Assembly (NCBI RefSeq): GCF_963853765.1
Contig: NC_088858.1
Span: 12,834,001 to 12,898,000, forward strand
Length of the DNA stretch: 64,000 nt
Source of the DNA: Magallana gigas
Taxonomy: Eukaryota
Reading direction: 5' to 3'
In this document: positions 8,401-48,900 of the stretch, piece after piece
How the letters are laid out: each line of letters starts with the position of its first letter
Position numbering within the stretch: the first letter of the stretch is position 1
Made by a program: the position numbers and the translations under genes
Notes under the pieces: generated by a model
Database searches by the model: none
Seen by the model: only the letters and a program-made list of their open reading frames with translations
Told to the model about the DNA's origin: nothing

Positions 8401-11400
8401 GGCTTGGATGGGGTAAGTGTAACTCAGTGTAAACACATGGAGGTTCAGTTGCTGTCTTCAGTGTAAATTAGCATGATTTTATTGTCTTTTTATAGATTTT
8501 CTGCTGAAGGCACACCTTTTTACATGGATACATCTGGAATAGTGAGAATGTGTAATAGAAGATTTGGGATGAGCTGGGTGCAAGTAGCAAATACCAAATC
8601 ACATGTAAGTTTCATACAAATGCTGAAAAAAATGAGATATATTTATTGTACATGCAGTTATATCTATTTCCATATACAAATACATGCTTTCTGTTCTATT
8701 TACAGACAAAAGGAAAATCCGATAATTACTGGATTGTTAGTGTACACGAAAATCCCCAACAACTACGGTAAGGACTTGAATGAAGAATTACACTTTAAGA
8801 ATTTAGCATGCAACCTGTTGCCTTATTTTTAAGTTTTGGAGGTAATTTTATGACTCCCACGGCTTTTTCAAAAACGTTCCTTCAATTTTCAAGCAAATAT
8901 AAAAAAAATTGCAATTTATGGAACATGACAATACTGCATAACTTTTGTTCCTTTGTACAGAACATCACTCGAACATTTTGCTCTTTGTTTTACTTCTTGT
9001 ACTTAAGTAGAATTAGTAGATGAGGGCAAGTTGACTAACACTGTATTGTAGGTGTATCCCTTGTAAGGGGGCCCGCTTTCCTCCGGTCCTCCCCCGACCA
9101 GCTGTGGGAATCCTTCCCTTCCAGGTTCCCCTTTGTCAAATGAACACTGAAAAGAGTCAGTATGAGGTATGGACTTCTTCATGATCCTATCTTAATTATT
9201 CCCTCGTGCAACTTGTTGCGAAAGGGATATAGCATCGCTGCTGTGCGTGTATGTATATGTGTCTTCAGCGTGGAAACAAGTTTAAAAGAAAACTCTTGCA
9301 GGAATATTTATCAAACTTCGTACACTTATTTGGCATGGTAAAAGGACAAACCCTGTTAATTTTCGAGTCAATTAGTTGAATACTTTTTAATATATCGTTA
9401 AAATAACACAATTTGAAACAGAAATTTTATGTAAGTCTTGACAATAACTACTTCCGCTTCACTTCTGTGAAACCAAAGTGAGAGTAAGCAGTTCAAATCA
9501 ACAACTTGATATTTTTTGGATTTAGATCTAGTATAGGTAAAAAAAAAAAAACCCTTTTTGTAGTAATGGAGGGTTAGTAGAATTTGGTCTTTTCATTTAC
9601 ATATTCATAGATGAATATTCCTAAATAATGCATCCCCCACACAATTTTTCATGTCGCAAGGGATGCTCCGCTGTGCGGTGCCCTTGTTCAATTTTCTATT
9701 AAATTGCAATTTATGTACTTTTGTTGGACTTTATTTTGAAGGAGGAAAAATCTGGAATATATTTTGTGCTCAAGATTACACTCTTTTTGAAAAGAAAAAA
9801 ATCATATTTTTCTTTGTAGGAAGTATTTCACAGAACACAGTTGCTAAGCAGCCATTTACAGTTCTGGAATACCATTGGTTATGAATATGACACTTCAATA
9901 GCTAGCGAACTTGCTAAGCCCTCACAAGAAGCCCTGATGAAACTATTTGCTGTAAGCTTCCATTTTAACAGGATTACTATTACTTATCATTGAACCATAC
10001 ATTTATCGCTTGTTTAACTGCAAAGAATGAATAACTTATTTCCCTGCTTTTTGGCACCTTTTGGTAGTTCTATCATTTATAAATATTTCTATTTCAGTTA
10101 TCTGCTAGATCAGATAGAGAGTTTCGGGCTTTAGAGGTTTGTGAGATGATGTCAGAGCCACACACTCTGCAGCTAGCCATTAAATATGCCTGTCGCCTGA
10201 AATACATGCAGCTGGCCGAGAGGATCAGTGAGGTGGTTCAGAGGAAGTCCGCTGAACAAGCAGAGGAGGTGGAGGAGGAAGAGAAAGAAGTGGTTCATAG
10301 GGTTCAAAGGTCAAGATCATCAGTTTGCTTTGGAAGTTAAATTCAATATGGATTTTCATAAAACATATATTTTCTATGTCGGAGGATTATTTATTTTGAA
10401 TAGGGGTTGCTTTATTTAAAAGCACTGCAAGGTTGGGAAGATTAAGGGAACTGTTAATATTGTTTCATTTTTAATCCAAATATCTTCTGTTCAGGGATTT
10501 TTATCCTGTCCGAATCAGCTTAGTCATTTTATATTCTATCATAAAAAAACAACAGTAAATTCTTGATCTTAAGTATGAATTTTATAGAAATGTAGAAACT
10601 CGTCAGATTATTCAATACCAATAGCCTTGTATGTAATGTACACATGGTTCTCTTTTTGCCTTGTTTCAAATCTTTAGTAGAGAAGTTGAAATTATCGAAT
10701 GCTGGAGTTCTCTTTGTCATAGCTGTTTTAGTGTTTTATGTCTAAAGTTAATGTTTTAAACTGATATCTGGAATTTTGATCAGTGCACCAAATATAATGT
10801 TTACATGTGGTGCTAAAATGATTGCTTCACTTGCACAACACAGGCTTATTTTGTTCCCATATATACATGTAATGTGTTCTGGTGTATTACATGTATTTAT
10901 AAGTGTATATTATCTTGATTGTACAGAGTTCACAATCACCAAAATCATGTTCAGGAAGATGAAGAGATGGAAGAAGAAGATGTGGAGGTTGACCAGGAAA
11001 ATGCAGAAACAAACAGTGCTGGTGGTAATGTTCGCATTCAGATCTACAGTTTTAGAATTTATATTCAATGTATACTGTAGAATCCCTATCTTACGGAAGT
11101 ACATGTATATATTTCTGCAATTCTGTGGTTTTGTATCAAATTGAAAGAATGTAGAATCATGAATACCAAACTTTAATTCAATCTTATATTAACTTGACAT
11201 GATTTTCCATGGATGTTAATTCTTTGCGCTTGATAAGGGTCTACAGTATATAAAAGATATGTCTGGAGTATGAACTGTCAACATTTAAAAAATTCTGAGA
11301 AATGAAAATGTTATCCTTATGTAAACCCCAAACATGTGTGGTTTATAGATATTTTTGCCAATATTTATTCACTTCCACATATTTTACCCCTTCTACCAAG

Positions 11401-38963: not shown

Positions 38964-39955
38964 AGCCCGGTACCAGTTTGTAGGTGTGTAATTTCCCACT
39001 TTTAGATTTAATAGTCTGACTTTACGCAATATCTACATAATTTTTTAACTGTTTATTTTTTCATTTTATTCCTTTTTATTTATTTCAAAATGTCCTATTG
39101 TTTATTTCCTCCCTACTCATGCATGCACAATTAGCTTAAAAATGGATCGCATGCCAAGAAATGCCGTCCGGTTTAGAATAAGCCTAGCTAACGGTCTTCA
39201 ATTATACACTTAATTAAGGTCAGCCGCATTTGCTTGAAAACCCGCAATAAGGGATCGAGCCGAACTAAAGTTTCAGAGATTTGGGTCAGCGGCTGTTTAC
39301 GACAGTCTTTAGAGTGCCAATGTTTATAGCTTAGAGATACGTGTTGGGATAAGAATAAAAAGGACACAAGCTAAGATTTGGAAGACAGACACTTTGTAAT
39401 TAAAAAAAATAATTATGTGATTTTCCTCTTTTACTTATTCATCGTCTCCATATTGTTTACACTTAGAAACACAATCTCTAAGAATTATTTCTCTCTGAAA
39501 TACAGAATGTTATGTTTTGTTTGGGTTTTTTTTTTTTATAAACCTAGCATTTTTTAAAAAATTAAGCCGATATACGTACATGTAATATTGATGTACGTCA
39601 TGTAAAGTGTTAAATACACGGGTATCTTTTTTGTTAAGAGAGTTTTAATTAAGGTATGGCTAACTAACCTTGTATTAAAGGAACTGAATAAATATGAAAT
39701 ATTCAATCGGATGTAAATGTATGACCACCGCAGGGTTTATTATTATGCGATGTTTCATATAATAAATGTTACATGAAAGTTTATAGCGTTAATTTTTAAG
39801 GTATGCTGTAGAATGTATATAACACTTTTTTTATTGTTAGTTTTGAATATATTTCGTTAAACAGACACTGCACCGATCAATTATCTGTATTGGTGGGAAA
39901 TCCGAAATGCAAAAATTCTGGTAAACCGGTAAAAACTAAAACAAAAGTTGTAAAA

Positions 39956-42900
39956 ATGTCGAATTTTTTTCGACCATGGGTGGAGACACGGCCGGCTGTA
40001 CCTGTGCATAGACGTGTAATGTTGCCGTTGAATAACAACATGCAGGTACGTAACTACTTGTTTATGGATGATTCATAGTGTAGGTGATCAATACATTAAA
40101 GTTACCCACTCAGTAGAATGATAACTATAGGCTATATTTTAGCAAAAAATTAAGCCGAAATACTTATATAGTGAATATGCAGAATTTATATAAAAGTCAA
40201 TGTACGTGTATTTGACAAATTTATGTTGATATTGTATGTCATGTCAGTTATTCAGTGAAGCTTTATAATTTTTTTAATTTTTATTTCACATGCATATTTT
40301 ATTGCAATAGGACCACAATGATATGGAAAATAAGAAAACTCCACGCAAAGTAAAAGGATTTTTTGAGCTGAAACATTCTCAAAGAGGAGAAAGGAAAAGA
40401 AAATACCAAAGCGCTTTTCAAGAAGCTTCAAGCTGTGTTCACAGTGATATTTCCTCCATCAAAGTCCAGTTCAATTTTGATAATGGACATGTTTTATCCT
40501 TTTTTCCCCGCAAAGTGTCCCCTGATGAAAATGCTAGTTTGGAAGATGAAGGTGTTAAGAAATCTCAAGACCTTGCTGTAATTCAACAGGTTATTGCAGT
40601 TAAGGACAAGTTCAGAATTTCTGACGAAGCTTTACATGAACTTCATATGATTGGTTCAATAATACCAAGCAAGTCAGCCATCAATACAGAAAAATACCGT
40701 CTCAACACAACTCTTGAAATAATGAGCCATCCAACAGTAAGTACATGTACCGTGCTTTTTTATGTGTTGACCACTGACTTATTTAGCACGTTTTATTATC
40801 TTATCATTTGAATATCAATTTTTAGAAACCGATCGATCATAGCACAAGCCAATTTACTTTTATTTATTTTTTTAACAAAGGCAGACTGCAGTACTAGAAA
40901 GCTAGAGCACATTCTAGAGTTTGTACTTCAACACCAAAAATACCAGAAGTATATTGAGAATGACACTGTTACCCTGCGTTTTTCCTGTGATGGTGCCAAA
41001 ATTGCCAAAAATATCTCCTCAGTAAGAGGGGTGTTCAAGATTTTGGCACCAAGACAGTCATTGCCAGATAAGCTTGAAGATTTGAGCATGTGTCCGGAAG
41101 ATGAGTTTACTCTTTTCTTTTACATTGGTGAGAAACTTTGTATTTATTGAAATTTCCTGTCATGTATTTTGGAATTATTATTTCGATTATCACATGTTTA
41201 TTTCAATTAAGGAGATGAAAATCGATGCAGTTTAGAGGAATATGCCTCTGGGACATTAAGAGACATGGAAAATGTTCAATTGAATGGAATTGTAATCAAT
41301 GGAAGAAAAATCTCTGTAAAGTGGTAAAGTTATCTCATCATCTACGGTTATCGTTTTTTTTTATTCTATACCCTATTTGTTATTATAATATCATTTCAAA
41401 TTCTAAACTGGTACAATTATATATTTTGTAGGATAATGACTTGTGATTGGAAGGCACTTGCCTTACTGAGGGGAATTAATGGCGCTCAATGCGAATTTTT
41501 CTGCATGTGGTGCCACTGCTCCAAAAAGCAGATATGCGATTTCAGTAGTAAGTAACTGTTGTAAATTGATAAAATGATACAAACATTGTAATAAAAACAA
41601 TAGCAATTGCTGGACAACTAATGTGATTTTATAATGTTTTTTGTAGTCCCATCTTGGTTGATACAGAGATCTAAAGAAGAACAACAAACTGTTCTAAATT
41701 CTGAAAAGAAAACGTTCGGGTACAAAGATACAGATCTCTGCCCTTTCATTTCATACCATGACATGCCCATTGATGATCTTCACATGCGCATAAGGATTTC
41801 TCTAAAGCTCTTCAATCAGGTACATTGTCTCTTATTAATATACACGAATGTATACTTTTAACGACTCTGCTAACTATCTGCATACACAAGATCTCATTGC
41901 TTGATTTTGACAATTTTAAATTCAGCTTGTGACCTGGGCAATAGACCAGAAATCTGAAGACAATTTGAAAAGAGAACTGAAACGCGTAGGTGTCAGTTTC
42001 AGAATGTGGGAGGAAAGGGGGGATGACAAATTGAACACCAAAGTGAGGAAATGGTCTCAACCAACAGGTATATATATGCCTTTCTTTAAAAAAAAATACT
42101 ATAAGTGTTTGCAGTTCTTGTAGCAAATCTTCTGAAAAATATTTGCCATTTCATTTGTAGGTGATGATTTACGTAAAATTATAAGAGACGTTCAAATCCA
42201 TCATATTCTGGACAATAAAAAGGACAGGCACTACGTATCAATAGAAAGCCTTTCAGTACAGCAGTTGAGGGACGAATTAACTAACAGACAGCTTTCCAAA
42301 AAAGGAAAAAAACCCGAGCTTGTAGCCCGATTAAAAGATGCTGTCGGAAATAACACTAAGGTATATTTACAGAAACTCAAATTCACTGAATAACATTTAT
42401 ATTTCCTGAATGTTTACATAGTAATATAAAACTTTTCATTCATGTTGTTTTAGATGAGGAGGAATGTAGGCTCTCGTCTTCAGGTATCGTACGACTTTTC
42501 AGAAGATGAAGAACAGGACCTGGACGTCGCAGCCCTGCAAGATCTGTGGTCAGGTTTCCATACGCTCATGGAAAGTCTCCGGGCATTACCTGGAACAGAT
42601 AATTACAAAGATATGGAAACTTTTGCAAAAGAAGCAAAGGAATGGGCCACTGAATTTCGAAAGCAAACCTTCGATGAAGATGTTATCCCATACATTCATG
42701 GTGTGTAAAAATGTTAAAGATTCTATAAAGGAATCATACAGCCTATCCCTACTTCTTTCAGGGTATAAAATTCATTTTGTTTAAATTACATTTTCAGCTA
42801 TGGTTTATCATGTACCACAGTTTCTGCAGACATACCACTACATACATGATATCGGGGTTGCCCAAGTTGAGCGTAAAAATTTTGACCATCGTCAAGCGTA

Positions 42901-43167
42901 CTTTGGAAGCACCAACAGAAATGGGTCCAAATGGAAAAAACATGTCTCAAAGCAGGTACATACCATTATTCAGATAGTCAATCTGCTTGATTTGTTTCAC
43001 AAATTTTTCTGCCTTCTGCAATGAATAATTAATCAAAGATAAATATGCATTTCAGTCCTTGTCATACTTGTGATCTTTAATTACAGATTCTTGAGAGGGA
43101 AAATAGAATGCTTTGGTCCAGTCTACATGGAACTGTACGTGAAAAAAGAAAATATGTAAAGTCTTAA
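39956..43167 (+). CDS. RAG1-core/Transib-like DDE transposase with internal SAP domain (~663 aa, 11 exons)
   Basis: Exons 39956-40045, 40311-40736, 40881-41127, 41212-41323, 41432-41547, 41647-41819, 41926-42067, 42161-42360, 42454-42700, 42798-42955, 43087-43167; all GT-AG, in phase, no stops (1992 nt). Motifs: TVTLRFSCDG, MTCDWKALALLRGINGAQCEFFCMWC, PIDDLH, TGDDLRKII, PYIHAMVYHVP, QVERKN. From memory these correspond to RAG1 VVVKESCDG, GYDEK...CTLC, IDALH, NGNFARKLM, NYFHKTLAHVP and GNESGN. Confidence 0.85.
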
Positions 43168-44845
43168 ATACCGTCGTTTAGCTACAGTCCCAGTAACCAT
43201 GTTTCTACGAGACCTCGTAAAAGTTACGTGAATCCAGGATGGACCACGAACATACAGTATTACAGGGTCACATAGCTGTGGTCGGTTCTCCTCAGCATCT
43301 TTCCACGTGCATCTAAACAAAGATTTTTATAATGAAGCAGATCTTTATTATTATCAAGCAATATTTATTAAGAAGCCCACAAAGATGAACAAATATTGTA
43401 TTTCTATGTATAGAAATGTTGTTTTGTTATATTAAAATAATATTGTATCACACTTTTGATATTATTGTTATTGTTTTTACTATTACAATTAAGTAAATAA
43501 TGTATAAAATTGATGTTCCTTATTGCAATAATATTGTATCACACATTTGTTATTATTATTGGTTTTTTTTAAATTAAGTAAATAAACATTCACATTGGAT
43601 TAAATTTATATAATCATACCTTTTACAATTATTGTGTTGGTATTGCTTTCTCTCCTTATATCCCCACCAGACATGAATAAACTCTTTGAAGGAGACAAAT
43701 GTTTCTGTTGATGTTTTGTAACATCTATTTGACCAGTTCTCTCCAATGGCAGAAGTCATTTCTTCACCTGTAAAAATAAACATAAATTACTTAACAATTA
43801 TTTTTAGTAACCGAACACTTGCATTCCAAGTATGTCTTTCAAGATACCTCCTGTCTCCACTTGCATGGGACCAAAACTTTAAATAGACTTGTCATATGCT
43901 CAAGAAAACAATTATCATAATATTGCTTCAGATAGTTCATTACCTGTGAGGTAGAAATCCACATTTCCATTGTCTGTTGGCAGAGTATCCATCAAAGACC
44001 TGAAGTATTTATTAAAACTTGCACAAGAAAAAGGCACTTTCACTGTTGTCCTCGACTGGATGCCTAATGCACCATCAGGTGTACGGCGTGCATCGCCTAA
44101 ACTGTCAAAGATGGCCTGTCGCAGTGCCATAATGTCATCAGGGTTGTTCCTGCAGTCTATTTTGTTGGAATCTAAATTCCTGCGGTGAAGATGACAAGAG
44201 AGGGGGTTTCCTTTATTTCTTTCAATGAATTGCTGCAATTCCTGGTTTCCATCTAAACTGACCCAGGTTGATGGTCCCTCCCAGTCCTTCCATTTTACTA
44301 GCACTTCTTGCTCCCTCCTCTCTAAAATGTCTTCAATCTCCCATAGTTTCTGAGATAAATTGTTGAGAATAGTTTAAAACATGAATGATTATTCTATTAT
44401 TGTTTTTCTTAATTAGTTTGGATAATTCATAATTTTTCCCGATGTAGGATATTCGTGATCTAAGAGTGGCGCTAGATCCGCCTACACACTTTGACTGAGA
44501 TTTGTATACCTGCTTCAAATAAATATAAATAATAGAATATAGTTCTAAAATACACATAAAGGTAGATCAAAAGGGAACCCTAACGATATTTAACGATCGC
44601 AAACCATAATATATACATAGATATGTCTATACATATTATAAACATCATCAGGGACTTGTACTATGATTATTACAACTATTCTTAGAAATGAATATGTTAC
44701 AAAAGTTTAAATGTAAGTATATACGATATTTGTATAATAATATTTACCGTACCTCTTTCGACTTGTTTTCCTTTAAACTTCTAAAATTTAAATTTTCCTC
44801 CCAATCTCCGAATCTTACAGGGGCTCTTCTCTTTCTCTGTGCCAT
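43123..44845 (-). CDS. Chromodomain-containing protein (~278 aa, 4 exons) convergent with the transposase
   Basis: Exons 44845-44753 (MAQRKRRAPVRFGDW.., NLS-like), 44349-43944, 43767-43620, 43312-43123; phases 0/1/2 are consistent. Chromodomain KLWEIEDILERREQEVLVKWKDWEGPSTWVSLDGNQELQQFI, followed by an unrecognised ~190-aa domain. Confidence 0.8.
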
Positions 44846-45158
44846 TTCTTAGATAAGAATGCAGCTGAAGAAAGCACACAGGGAGCTCGATTTCACTTAA
44901 TCGGTTCATCGCCGTGGTAACGCTGACCGCCTGGGATGTGGTCACTAATTTATAACGGGGTTGTGAAAGCGGAATATTGGAGCAGAATTTCTTGGCATGA
45001 TATGACAGTAAATTATGGCTCTTGCTGATATATATACATAAAATCTCTATATTAAAAAAAATTAAAAACAAATCATACGTCAATGAGGCAGGTACCGCAG
45101 TCTATACTGAAATAGCTAGTACACGCATTACAGATGTTTGATCCACCTCTAAATTTAT

Positions 45159-45903: not shown

Positions 45904-48900
45904 ATGTTTGAGAAAAAAGGGGGTAATCATCCCGACGACCTTTTGTCAAAACCTTCACAGACACACAAAGCATGTGAAAGACAATCGGGCAACTTTTCAG
46001 ACTGCTCACATAGGTTTCTACTGAAGGATAAAACTTTCAGCAGGCAATATGCACATTTATATGCAGAAAGATTGTGGGAAGTACGTCCGAAAGTAGAGGC
46101 TTCTGCAAGAAAAAAATGGGGTATAAATAGAATATGTTTTGTTTCATATTTAATTTGTAATATTTTGTTTTAGTGGTTAATAGATTTACACCTTTTTAGA
46201 ACAAGATGTAAACACATGACCTGCTGAATTTTTTTTATTACACTCTGGCCTATATTTAATAATATCACAAATCAAATTGCTGAGTGTTCAAAACTAGTTG
46301 GTACTTGCTTGTTAATATATAGCTTCATGTCAAACAGTGCCTTATACGGTTCATACGATGAGACTGACACATACATCGGTATACAGGTCCAGTACAATCT
46401 CCAGATTTAGCTATATAGCTTGAATAAGCTAAATAGCTTTATTAAGCTATTTCAGAATAGCTTCATTTAGCTATTTTGTCATACATTTTTCTTAAATGTG
46501 TAATTTTTTCAGTATGTATAAAAAATCGCGCTTTAGTGCAGTGATAATTTTCAACTTTGAACTGTTATATAAACAATGCATGTAAAGATTACTCAAAAGT
46601 TTGCGTCTCCTTAAAGAGACTTTGCACTAAAAGTTTTGGGGCAACTGATTCATGAACACACAGTTACTTCTTGAATGAAATATAAAGGAGGTCAGTTATG
46701 GTAAACAAGATAATTGATTGGTAATAATTTATCACAATGAGAAGAAATCATACTTATCCACGCCTCATTGCACACAAAGTGGTGAACAGTTACCCAAACA
46801 ATGGAAATGTATTTTTTGCTTAAAAGTGTTTAAATCTGCAGTGTTAAAACTATCTTGCATTTGGGTCAAGTTTATAATGGTCAGTGGCGCAAATATGAGT
46901 AGCAAGTTAATTGCGATTTTTCGTCCATTTCTTACAATTAATATTTTCTTCAAAAACTGCATATAAATAGCTTTATTAAGCTATTTTGAATAGCTTTATA
47001 AAGCAATATAGCTTTTTCAAGCTATATAGCTAAATCTGGAGATTGTACTGGACCTGGTACATATACCTTTAGGTACTTGTGACAGTAGTTTTTTTGTCCC
47101 CCGCCGCAACGCGGTGCGGGGACATAGAAATGCCGGGCGTCCGTCCGTGCGTCCGTGTGTCCGTGCGTCCGTGTGTCCGTGCGTCTGTGCGTCCGTGTGT
47201 CCGTGCGTCCGTGTGTCCGTCCGTCACACTTTTTTGTAAGCGCTCTCATGCCTACAAATTTTGACGGATTTTCATTAAATTTATACCAAATGTATATACC
47301 ACTATTACCTTGGTCAAGTTCGAAAATCAGCATTGGTCGATACTACTTGTTGGAGTTATGGTACTTTGACCGCAATAATGACTCTGTTTTATCCAAAAAT
47401 TGACCTTGTAAGCGCTCTCATGCCTACAAATTTTGACGGATTTTCACTAAATTTATACCAATTGTATATACCACTATTACCTTGGACGAGTTCGAAAATC
47501 AGCATTGGTCGATACTTTTTGTTGGAGTTATGAGACTTTGACTGCAATTATGACTCTGTTTTATCCATAAATTGACCTTGTAAGCGCTCTCATGCCTACA
47601 AATTTTGACAGATTTTCATTAAATTTATACCAAATGTTTATATCGCTATTACCTTGGTCAAGTTCGAAAATCAGCATTGGTCGATACTTTTTGTTGGAGT
47701 TATGGTACTTTGACCGCAATAATGACTCCGTTTTATCCAAAAATTGACCTTGTAAGCGCTCTCATGCTTACAAATTTTGACAGATTTTCATTAAATTTAT
47801 ACCAAATGTTTATACCACTAATACTTTGGTCAAGTTCGAAAATCAGCATTGGTCGATGGACTCGATACTAGTATACTGCTTGACCGGCGGGGGACTCAGG
47901 AATTCTATTCTTGTTTACTAGGTTTTCATTTATTAATGCACATGACGGTTGTGTGTGCTGTGTATATCACTGTAATTATACCCTGTCCCAAGTTTCTGCT
48001 TCCAACACTTTTTGTTTGATATTTCGAAAACCATAAATACCTTTGTGCCCAATAGGGCTGGGACGATACTGTACTTAGCCGATTAGGTACATATCACAAT
48101 AAATGAGATGCGATACGATACATATCACTATACATTGCAACTTAATGAAAACATGAATAAGGGCTTAAATTTTATTGAATCTGTCAACGTATTACCGCAT
48201 GTCCAAAGTGATTTCATTATATGAATATATATATCATTTCAAAATGAGCATTGCACAATTTACAAATTACTTTAGTCTTGTATTCACTACTTTTTCATAA
48301 AGAAGTAATCCAAAAGTTTTCCACACTCCAGAATTAGATTCATAACAGTTTTGACAACTTTAAGAGGTTTTCCGCTATCTTTGTACTTTCATGATAGGCG
48401 CGCGGACTAAAAATAGCCAATATATATAGCTTGGATATTTTTGGAAATTAAAAAAAAGTTTGCTAAGGTATTGTTGTATTATTGGTAAATGTATAGATCC
48501 AAATATCGTCAAAATAAATACCGCGATGCACAGGTGCATCAGTGGATTGTCCCATTCCTAGTGCCCAACTACATTTATCCATTAGAATAAAAAAAAAGTT
48601 CAAATTTTCTGTTTTGAAACGCCCCCGCCGCTGCAGGTTCCAACACACAACCAAAAATAAAAAGTCTACGTTAAGTTCAAAAATAAAAAGTCTACGGGTA
48701 TATTGCATGGCAAACAACATGAAAACAACATGAAAAGTTCCAGAATGATAACGTTGAAAAATTGAGAGAATTGTTCTGAGTACCGTACGGTGCTTCCAAT
48801 TGGAGAAAAGGTGTTAAAATTCCTCATTATAAATCTCCGTAAGAAATTTGTTTTTGTTCATTTTAATTTCTCGGTGTATAAAAAAATGAAATGTCAATGA

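What the first reader, a model, noticed from the sequence alone, without database searches (positions are those of the whole stretch)
44200..44349. Partner chromodomain keeps a full aromatic cage (W/W/W)
LWEIE...VKWKDW...STW aligns with the HP1/Pc pattern Y-x-VE...LKWKGF...NTW, with Trp at all three cage positions. This predicts methyl-lysine binding. It could tether the transposase to heterochromatin (as chromoviral integrases do) or to active marks (as RAG2 does). The C-terminal ~190 aa is a domain I do not recognise.
Basis: partly seen in the sequence, partly recalled or inferred. Interest (0 to 1): 0.7.

Follow-up and report, generated by a model that had tools for sequence, protein, structure and literature searches.

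The report
Transposon partner protein with intact chromodomain
The second gene of a young two-gene DNA transposon in this oyster genome encodes a small protein with a real HP1/Polycomb-type chromodomain, aromatic cage intact, and the same gene pair occurs from sea anemone to amphioxus, so this transposon family seems to carry its own chromatin reader.

Summary
Window 44349-44215 (minus strand) encodes a chromodomain. Trp sits at the three cage positions (W34, W51, W54 of a 278-aa protein) and at the structural core position (W60).

Pfam Chromo alone is below threshold (E 0.12). A family profile, however, hits only chromodomains in the PDB. AlphaFold gives a strand-strand-strand-helix fold at pLDDT 90-96. 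All top-50 Foldseek matches are methyl-lysine-binding chromodomains.

The gene is spliced in RNA. It is the second gene of a 5.85-kb transposon (39150-44999; 13-bp inverted ends; three near-identical intact copies; no target-site duplication). The other gene is a DDE transposase with the D-D-C(2)C-H(4)H-E signature of the CACTA/Mirage/Chapaev/Transib/RAG1 clade.

The tail-to-tail pair recurs in diverged oyster paralogues, Littorina, Mytilus, Nematostella and Branchiostoma belcheri. The "partner" reading is therefore supported.

The C-terminal ~190 aa folds confidently as an alpha/beta domain with a conserved H-x2-C-x2-C-x12-C motif. It has no Pfam, PDB-sequence or clear fold match.

Methyl-lysine binding, contact with the transposase and chromatin targeting are all inferred, not shown.

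The scan had already noted this transposon type on another piece of the same genome (s1-382346).

The parts
39150..44999 (.). Whole two-gene DNA transposon, 5850 bp
   Evidence: Homology with the copies on C8 (99.5%) and C7 (98.2%) stops exactly here. Uninterrupted paralogues of the host repeat join 39149 directly to 45000.
39150..39162 (+). Left terminal inverted repeat, CATGCCAAGAAAT
   Evidence: Identical to the reverse complement of the right end.
44987..44999 (-). Right terminal inverted repeat
40323..43024 (+). Transposase CDS, 625 aa in 9 coding exons: 40323-40736, 40881-41127, 41212-41323, 41432-41547, 41647-41819, 41926-42067, 42161-42360, 42454-42700, 42798-43024
   Evidence: Six GT..AG introns are seen as joints in RNA contigs. 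The other two come from homology with the C3 paralogue.
42241..42342 (+). SAP domain inside the transposase
   Evidence: Pfam SAP, E 1.3e-11, 44.2 bits against a cut-off of 23.9.
44753..44845 (-). Partner exon 1 (31 aa): basic stretch plus the P-x-R-F-G-x-W motif
   Evidence: The motif is conserved at the N-terminus of full-length relatives. Splicing of intron 1 was not seen in the RNA contigs.
43944..44349 (-). Partner exon 2: chromodomain plus the first half of the C-terminal domain
   Evidence: The joint 43944|43767 is seen in metatranscriptome contigs.
44215..44349 (-). Chromodomain, residues 32-76. Cage codons: W34 at 44343-44341, W51 at 44292-44290, W54 at 44283-44281. Core W60 at 44265-44263
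43620..43767 (-). Partner exon 3
   Evidence: Joints 43944|43767 and 43620|43312 in RNA contigs. This region is colinear with exon 2 in intron-less relatives.
43123..43312 (-). Partner exon 4 with the stop codon
   Evidence: RNA contig 43102-43312 is joined to 43620. Homology with the C3 paralogue and full-length relatives.
43270..43636 (-). Conserved H211-x2-C214-x2-C217-x12-C230 motif, split by intron 3; a candidate zinc site
   Evidence: H in 31/34, C in 33/35, C in 12/21 (the other residues at this column, mostly Tyr, look like intron read-through) and C in 13/14 family members.

Best explanation
The finding is the chromodomain (residues 32-76) of a 278-aa accessory protein. That protein is encoded by the second, convergently transcribed gene of a low-copy, recently mobile two-gene cut-and-paste transposon. 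The protein has three parts: a short basic N-terminus, an HP1/Polycomb-class chromodomain with an all-Trp cage, and a ~190-aa alpha/beta C-terminal domain carrying a conserved His-Cys3 motif. Proposed mechanism (inferred): the cage binds a methylated lysine on a histone H3-type tail, while the C-terminal domain contacts the transposase or the transposon ends. Transposase activity or integration would then be tied to a particular chromatin state. This is the same logic as the chromodomain of chromoviral integrases and the PHD finger of RAG2, but carried out by an unrelated protein. Shown here: the fold, the cage residues and their conservation, splicing and transcription, intact copies, and linkage of the two genes across three phyla. 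Inferred: ligand, binding to the transposase, and targeting.
For: Chromo fold and cage.

Gene model: exon 2/3 and 3/4 joints are seen in RNA contigs, and the few reads of a poly(A) run lie in the direction expected for sense transcripts in most stranded libraries.

Mobile element: precise ends with a 13-bp inverted repeat. There are three copies on different chromosomes, 98-99.5% identical, with both reading frames intact.

Partnership: all six loci in this genome that encode the partner exon sit next to transposase sequence. These are three young copies, one decayed fragment, and two old lineages at 40-50% partner identity. The same tail-to-tail pair occurs in Littorina saxatilis, Mytilus coruscus, an unnamed ENA assembly, Branchiostoma belcheri (weak but colinear hits that keep the D, D and E motifs) and Nematostella vectensis.

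Family: 118 clusters at E<=1e-3 and 62 at E<=1e-10 in 1.84 billion representatives. The full-length relative P0031 folds at pLDDT 86, pTM 0.73.
Against: The window protein alone does not reach Pfam's Chromo cut-off.

I could not open the model coordinates, so the cage geometry is inferred from alignment only.

The hairpin between strands 1 and 2 is four residues shorter here than in LHP1 and in older paralogues.

Eight of 46 relatives lack an aromatic residue at cage position 3. The B. belcheri protein has a degenerate cage, and the B. floridae relative has no chromodomain at all.

The best PDB sequence match is cpSRP43, whose chromodomains bind non-histone peptides.

There are no binding data and no test of contact with the transposase. 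Only three insertion sites are known: two in high-copy repeats and one in unique DNA. That is too few to show any targeting.
Confidence: 0.55

Rival explanations
1. The partner reads methyl-lysine but serves as an anti-silencing factor, not a targeting subunit. It would occupy H3K9me- or K27me-marked chromatin on the element's own copies and compete with host HP1/Polycomb readers, keeping the transposon expressed.
For: The fold and cage evidence is the same as for the main reading. Two of the three young copies lie in high-copy repeats, which are likely silenced. The convergent genes overlap at their 3' ends, and one RNA contig runs antisense through the partner gene. That arrangement invites small-RNA silencing.
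Against: Nothing separates this from targeting. Strict physical linkage to the transposase over very long times fits a subunit at least as well. The conserved C-terminal domain with a His-Cys3 motif suggests a specific macromolecular contact.
Confidence: 0.2
2. The cage binds a non-histone ligand, for example a basic or methylated motif on the transposase itself. cpSRP43 chromodomains bind the Arg-rich tail of cpSRP54 in this way. The domain would then be an assembly module rather than a chromatin reader.
Against: Most sequence and structure matches are histone methyl-lysine readers. The E-value gap to them is small for so short a domain.
Confidence: 0.15
3. The domain is a chromo-shadow-like or purely structural module with no ligand pocket, and the Trp residues are kept for folding only.
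Against: All three cage positions are aromatic and conserved, and the sequence aligns to chromodomains, not chromo-shadow domains, in the PDB and Pfam searches.
Confidence: 0.07

Closest known systems
HP1 / Polycomb / LHP1 / CDYL / MPP8-class chromodomains (Pfam PF00385)
   Same: Three-strand-plus-helix fold. Aromatic residues at the three cage positions and the core Trp. Best sequence and structure matches.
   Different: Below Pfam's cut-off. An all-Trp cage. Shorter first hairpin. Attached to an unrelated C-terminal domain and encoded by a DNA transposon.
RAG2 and RAG2-like partners of RAG1-like transposases (ProtoRAG and protostome RAGL transposons; PMC7204232)
   Same: A second gene, convergently oriented with a transposase that carries the D-D-C(2)C-H(3-4)H-E signature shared with RAG1. 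It also contains a candidate histone-mark reader.
   Different: No Kelch propeller and no PHD finger, so the proteins are not homologous. The element has CAT, not CAC, termini and makes no 5-bp duplication.
Chromodomain of chromoviral (Ty3/gypsy) integrases; chromodomains of Ginger-type transposases (PMC6839031, seen only as a search hit whose text holds the word chromodomain, not read; the fusion claim is my own knowledge)
   Same: A chromodomain encoded by a mobile element and presumed to guide integration by chromatin state.
   Different: In those elements the chromodomain is fused to the integrase or transposase. Here it is a separate protein with its own large domain, partnered with a CMCT-clade DDE transposase.
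Chapaev / Chapaev3 transposons (Repbase; described in lancelet and Nematostella according to PMC4411706)
   Same: Same broad transposase clade and the same host taxa (lancelet, sea anemone).
   Different: I could not compare with Repbase sequences. The N-terminal 138 aa of this transposase has a single Cys, so it cannot hold the complex Chapa zinc finger that PMC4411706 describes. I do not know whether Repbase entries list a second gene.

Membership tests
Chromodomain (PF00385, HP1/Pc class) | Three antiparallel strands packed against a C-terminal helix | tested here: met
Chromodomain (PF00385, HP1/Pc class) | Aromatic residues at the three cage positions | tested here: met
   W34, W51 and W54 align with Y, W and W of LHP1. 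Conserved in the family at 29/33, 48/49 and 38/46.
Chromodomain (PF00385, HP1/Pc class) | Score above Pfam's gathering cut-off | tested here: not met
   12.7 bits against 25.1 for the window exon. The full-length relative P0031 reaches 24.4 bits (E 2.7e-5), and 12/52 members hit at E<=0.01 with a best E of 1.1e-5.
Chromodomain (PF00385, HP1/Pc class) | Binds methylated lysine peptides | not testable with these tools
   Needs peptide arrays or ITC.
RAG2 / RAG2-like | Kelch beta-propeller plus C-terminal PHD finger | tested here: not met
   No Kelch or PHD hit in 52 family members. The model is a chromodomain plus a ~170-aa alpha/beta domain, and no propeller appears among the fold matches.
CMCT clade of DDE transposases (CACTA/EnSpm, Mirage, Chapaev, Transib, RAG1), for the neighbouring gene | [quoted passage not shown] | tested here: met
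   The order SCDGAK ... CDWK ... CMWC ... HAMVYH ... VERKN is read in the spliced model and conserved in five other loci.
CMCT clade of DDE transposases | 5'-CA..TG-3' termini | tested here: met
   The ends read CATGCC...GGCATG.
CMCT clade of DDE transposases | 2-5 bp target-site duplication | tested here: not met
   No duplication in any of the three copies. Uninterrupted paralogues of the host repeat read GGATCG|ATATGAC exactly at the insertion point.
Transib / RAG-like transposons | CAC-starting ends resembling the RSS heptamer, and a 5-bp duplication (PMC7204232) | tested here: not met
   Ends start with CAT, and the duplication is 0 bp.
Transib / RAG1 | Detectable sequence similarity to solved RAG1 or Transib proteins | tested here: inconclusive
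   Exon-level profiles of the D1 and E regions find no RAG1 or Transib chain in the PDB at E<=10. There is no Pfam hit apart from SAP. The exons are short, and I could not submit the spliced protein.
Chapaev | N-terminal Chapa zinc-finger domain (PMC4411706) | tested here: not met
   The first coding exon (138 aa) has one Cys, and homology with the C3 paralogue starts at residue 8. I had no Chapa sequence to compare with.

The most novel reading that the evidence does not exclude
An ancient lineage of RAG1-clade transposons, shared by cnidarians and bilaterians, carries its own histone methyl-lysine reader as a separate subunit. That subunit is unrelated to RAG2. If so, a RAG1-type transposase has been paired with a chromatin-reading partner at least twice independently. 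This lineage also integrates without any target-site duplication.
Probability: 0.35. Interest if true: 0.8.

Novelty: new variant of a known kind. Interest (0 to 1): 0.62.

Why it matters
RAG2 links V(D)J cleavage to H3K4me3, and how RAG1-type transposases came to need a chromatin-reading partner is an open question. Here a transposase of the same broad clade travels with a different, unrelated candidate reader. The pair is kept from sea anemone to amphioxus and is still intact and transcribed in an oyster. That gives a second, independent system for testing whether and why this kind of transposase depends on a histone-mark reader. The partner is small, its cage residues are obvious mutation targets, and three intact copies supply natural sequences for assays. 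The chromo-less, transposase-less relative in Branchiostoma floridae may be a domesticated descendant.

Tried and rejected
1. Pfam on the window exon alone gave Chromo only at E 0.12, plus a chance PB1 hit.

2. Pfam on six transposase exons found nothing except SAP.

3. PDB profile searches with the D1-exon and E-exon alignments of the transposase gave only chance hits and no RAG1 or Transib. I therefore do not claim a RAG1 fold myself.

4. C-terminal domain of the partner:
- no Pfam family in 52 members;
- no PDB sequence match beyond chance;
- the ESM Atlas feature search returned nothing usable;
- the Atlas shape search returned only chromodomain proteins;
I cannot say the fold is new.

5. 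I first read the joints 39147-39149|44999-45000 in the reads as an allelic empty site. This was rejected. The flanks belong to a repeat with at least 590 copies, so those reads are paralogues. They still show the uninterrupted target sequence, but they do not prove that the insertion is polymorphic.

6. Literature: two full-text searches (Transib + chromodomain; chromodomain + cut-and-paste / accessory protein / transposase), and term searches for "chromo"/"chromodomain" inside PMC7204232, PMC4411706 and a DDE-transposon survey preprint, found no description of a separate chromodomain partner. Repbase Reports are not in the library.

7. Complex prediction was not used. The spliced transposase cannot be given by reference, and exon fragments would not be a fair test.

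Full report
**What is at the coordinates.** It is the start of exon 2 of a four-exon gene. By my model the exons are 44845-44753, 44349-43944, 43767-43620 and 43312-43123, giving 278 aa.
- The exon 2/3 and 3/4 junctions appear as joints with GT..AG on the minus strand in contigs of an oyster metatranscriptome.
- A contig runs colinearly from 43102 to 43312, so no further splice precedes the stop.
- Intron 1 was not seen spliced; one RNA contig is colinear across it.
- Exon 1 nevertheless carries a basic stretch and a P-x-R-F-G-x-W motif that recurs at the N-terminus of full-length relatives. I keep it in the model.

**Is it a chromodomain?**
- Pfam Chromo on the window exon alone is sub-threshold: E 0.12, 12.7 bits against 25.1.
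- Relatives exist. The word search found proteins at 45% identity.
- A five-sequence profile found 118 clusters at E<=1e-3 and 62 at E<=1e-10 among 1.84 billion representatives.
- The same profile against the PDB lists only chromodomains at the top: cpSRP43 at E 1.9e-4, then CDYL, LHP1 and MPP8.
- Twelve of 52 family members hit Pfam Chromo at E<=0.01, and no other family recurs.
- AlphaFold2 on the window exon with a 52-row alignment gives three strands and a helix at pLDDT 90-96.
- All 50 best Foldseek PDB matches are chromodomains, most of them solved with methyl-lysine peptides.

**The cage.** The pairwise alignment with LHP1 puts the window's W34, W51 and W54 opposite the Y, W and W of LHP1's YEIE / KW / GW motifs. 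W60 falls opposite the core Trp. That these are the cage residues is my own knowledge of HP1 (Y24/W45/Y48) and its relatives.
- Across the family, position 1 is aromatic in 29 of 33 sequences, position 2 is Trp in 48 of 49, position 3 is aromatic in 38 of 46, and the core Trp is kept in 43 of 48.
- The first hairpin is four residues shorter than in LHP1 and in the older paralogues.
- I had no access to model coordinates, so the cage geometry was not measured.

**The rest of the protein.** A full-length relative, P0031 (273 aa), folds at mean pLDDT 86 and pTM 0.73. It consists of the chromodomain followed by a compact alpha/beta domain.
- That domain has a conserved H-x2-C-x2-C-x12-C motif (H211, C214, C217, C230 in the window protein), which I read as a candidate zinc site.
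- It has no Pfam family, no PDB sequence relative, no usable Atlas neighbour, and only weak fold matches.
- Because the chromodomain filled the hit lists and I could not fold this domain alone, "unrecognised" is the right word. "Novel fold" would overstate it.

**Context: a two-gene transposon.** The partner exon has six loci in this 564-Mb genome.
- Three belong to 5.85-kb units that are 98-99.5% identical to the window's over 39150-44999. Their flanks are unrelated and the ends are precise.
- The ends are a 13-bp inverted repeat, CATGCCAAGAAAT.
- Both reading frames are intact in all three copies.
- The terminal 100 bp occur only in these copies plus one fragment, so there is no MITE progeny at this level of similarity.
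- None of the three copies has a target-site duplication.
- The window copy sits inside a repeat with at least 590 copies. Uninterrupted copies of that repeat read GGATCG|ATATGAC exactly where the element lies. The insertion therefore added nothing and duplicated nothing.
- I first took similar joints in the reads for an allelic empty site. They are more simply paralogues, so I do not claim that the insertion is polymorphic.

**The other gene.** The plus-strand gene (40323-43024, nine coding exons, 625 aa) has six introns confirmed by RNA joints.
- It carries a SAP domain (Pfam E 1.3e-11).
- It has, in order, SCDGAK, CDWK, C-x2-C, H-x4-H and VERKN. All are conserved in the paralogues and in other species.
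[quoted passage not shown] That clade makes 2-5 bp duplications. This element meets the motif and terminus criteria but not the duplication criterion.
- It lacks the CAC start and the 5-bp duplication of Transib and RAG-like transposons (PMC7204232).
- Exon-level profile searches find no RAG1 or Transib chain in the PDB.
I confirmed the missing duplication. I could test neither the fold nor the Chapaev link.
- The N-terminal exon has a single Cys, which does not fit the Chapa zinc finger described in PMC4411706.

**Is the chromodomain protein really a partner?** Yes, by linkage.
- The older paralogue on C3 has a partner 40% identical and a transposase 55-80% identical per exon. It keeps the same tail-to-tail order. 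So does a decayed copy on C1.
- Named relatives come from Mytilus coruscus, Littorina saxatilis, Batillaria attramentaria, Nematostella vectensis, Branchiostoma belcheri and B. floridae.
- In Littorina, Mytilus, an unnamed ENA assembly and Nematostella, a homologue of the window transposase lies immediately downstream on the opposite strand.
- In B. belcheri a 707-aa gene occupies that place. It gives weak but colinear matches that include the D, D and E motifs.
- The B. floridae relative has lost the chromodomain and has no transposase beside it.

**How it most likely works.** Shown: a chromodomain with a conserved cage, on a transcribed accessory protein that has stayed linked to one transposase family across cnidarians, molluscs and a cephalochordate.
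- Inferred: the cage binds a methylated lysine of a histone tail, the C-terminal domain holds the transposase or the transposon ends, and together they couple transposition to chromatin state.
- I cannot tell which mark is read.
- Three insertion sites (two in high-copy repeats, one in unique DNA) say nothing statistically.
- Rivals: an anti-silencing role, a non-histone ligand as in cpSRP43, or a purely structural module.

**Comparison and novelty.** The domain is an ordinary, if divergent, chromodomain. Chromodomains fused to integrases or transposases of mobile elements are known.
- What I did not find described is a separate chromodomain subunit travelling with a RAG1-clade DDE transposase (full-text searches; term searches inside PMC7204232, PMC4411706 and a DDE-transposon survey preprint).
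- Repbase, which may hold such entries under Chapaev, could not be searched.
- I therefore rate it a new variant of a known kind, with moderate to high interest because of the parallel with RAG2.

Noticed in passing
window 39149|39150 and 44999|45000; copies on C8 (L007+L012) and C7 (L008+L013): The transposon inserts with no target-site duplication. This is unusual for a DDE cut-and-paste element of this clade. The insertion point in the host repeat is GGATCG|ATATGAC.
   Followed up: yes
window 39030-39149 and 45000-45100: The flanks of the element are one high-copy repeat (at least 590 candidate copies at 96-98% identity). The transposon landed inside it. The left flank of the C7 copy is also a high-copy, partly tandem repeat (at least 843 candidates). 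The C8 flank is unique.
   Followed up: partly
window 43084-44999: One assembled contig of a run whose RNA label is only a guess carries the spliced transposase exons and then runs on, unspliced and antisense, through the whole partner gene to the right end of the element. The stop codons of the two genes are only ~100 bp apart, so the convergent transcripts would overlap.
   Followed up: no
window 42241-42342: A clear SAP DNA-binding motif (Pfam E 1.3e-11) lies inside the transposase between the 'WSQPTG' exon and the H(4)H/E exons. It is also present in the C3 paralogue, the ENA contigs and Nematostella.
   Followed up: partly
L036 (Branchiostoma floridae) and L017 (B. belcheri): The B. floridae relative of the partner lacks the chromodomain, has two annotated isoforms and has no transposase next to it. 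In B. belcheri the pair sits between ordinary host genes and the cage is degenerate. Either could be a domesticated copy or a relic.
   Followed up: partly
C8 copy, equivalent of window 44747-44749; C7 copy, equivalent of window ~39300: The C8 copy has about 367 extra bases in intron 1 of the partner gene, a few bases from the exon 1 donor. The C7 copy has about 1.1 kb inserted near the left end, plus several small deletions in non-coding parts.
   Followed up: no
window 47200-47860: Several tandem units of roughly 170-250 bp, 90-96% identical to a stretch next to the decayed element copy on C1. The ORFs called here look like artefacts of the repeat.
   Followed up: no
L020-L022 (ENA contigs), 8565-9866 minus strand: In the unnamed ENA assembly, a 433-aa ORF with no Pfam hit lies head-to-head just upstream of the intron-less partner gene. 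Whether it belongs to the element is unknown.
   Followed up: no
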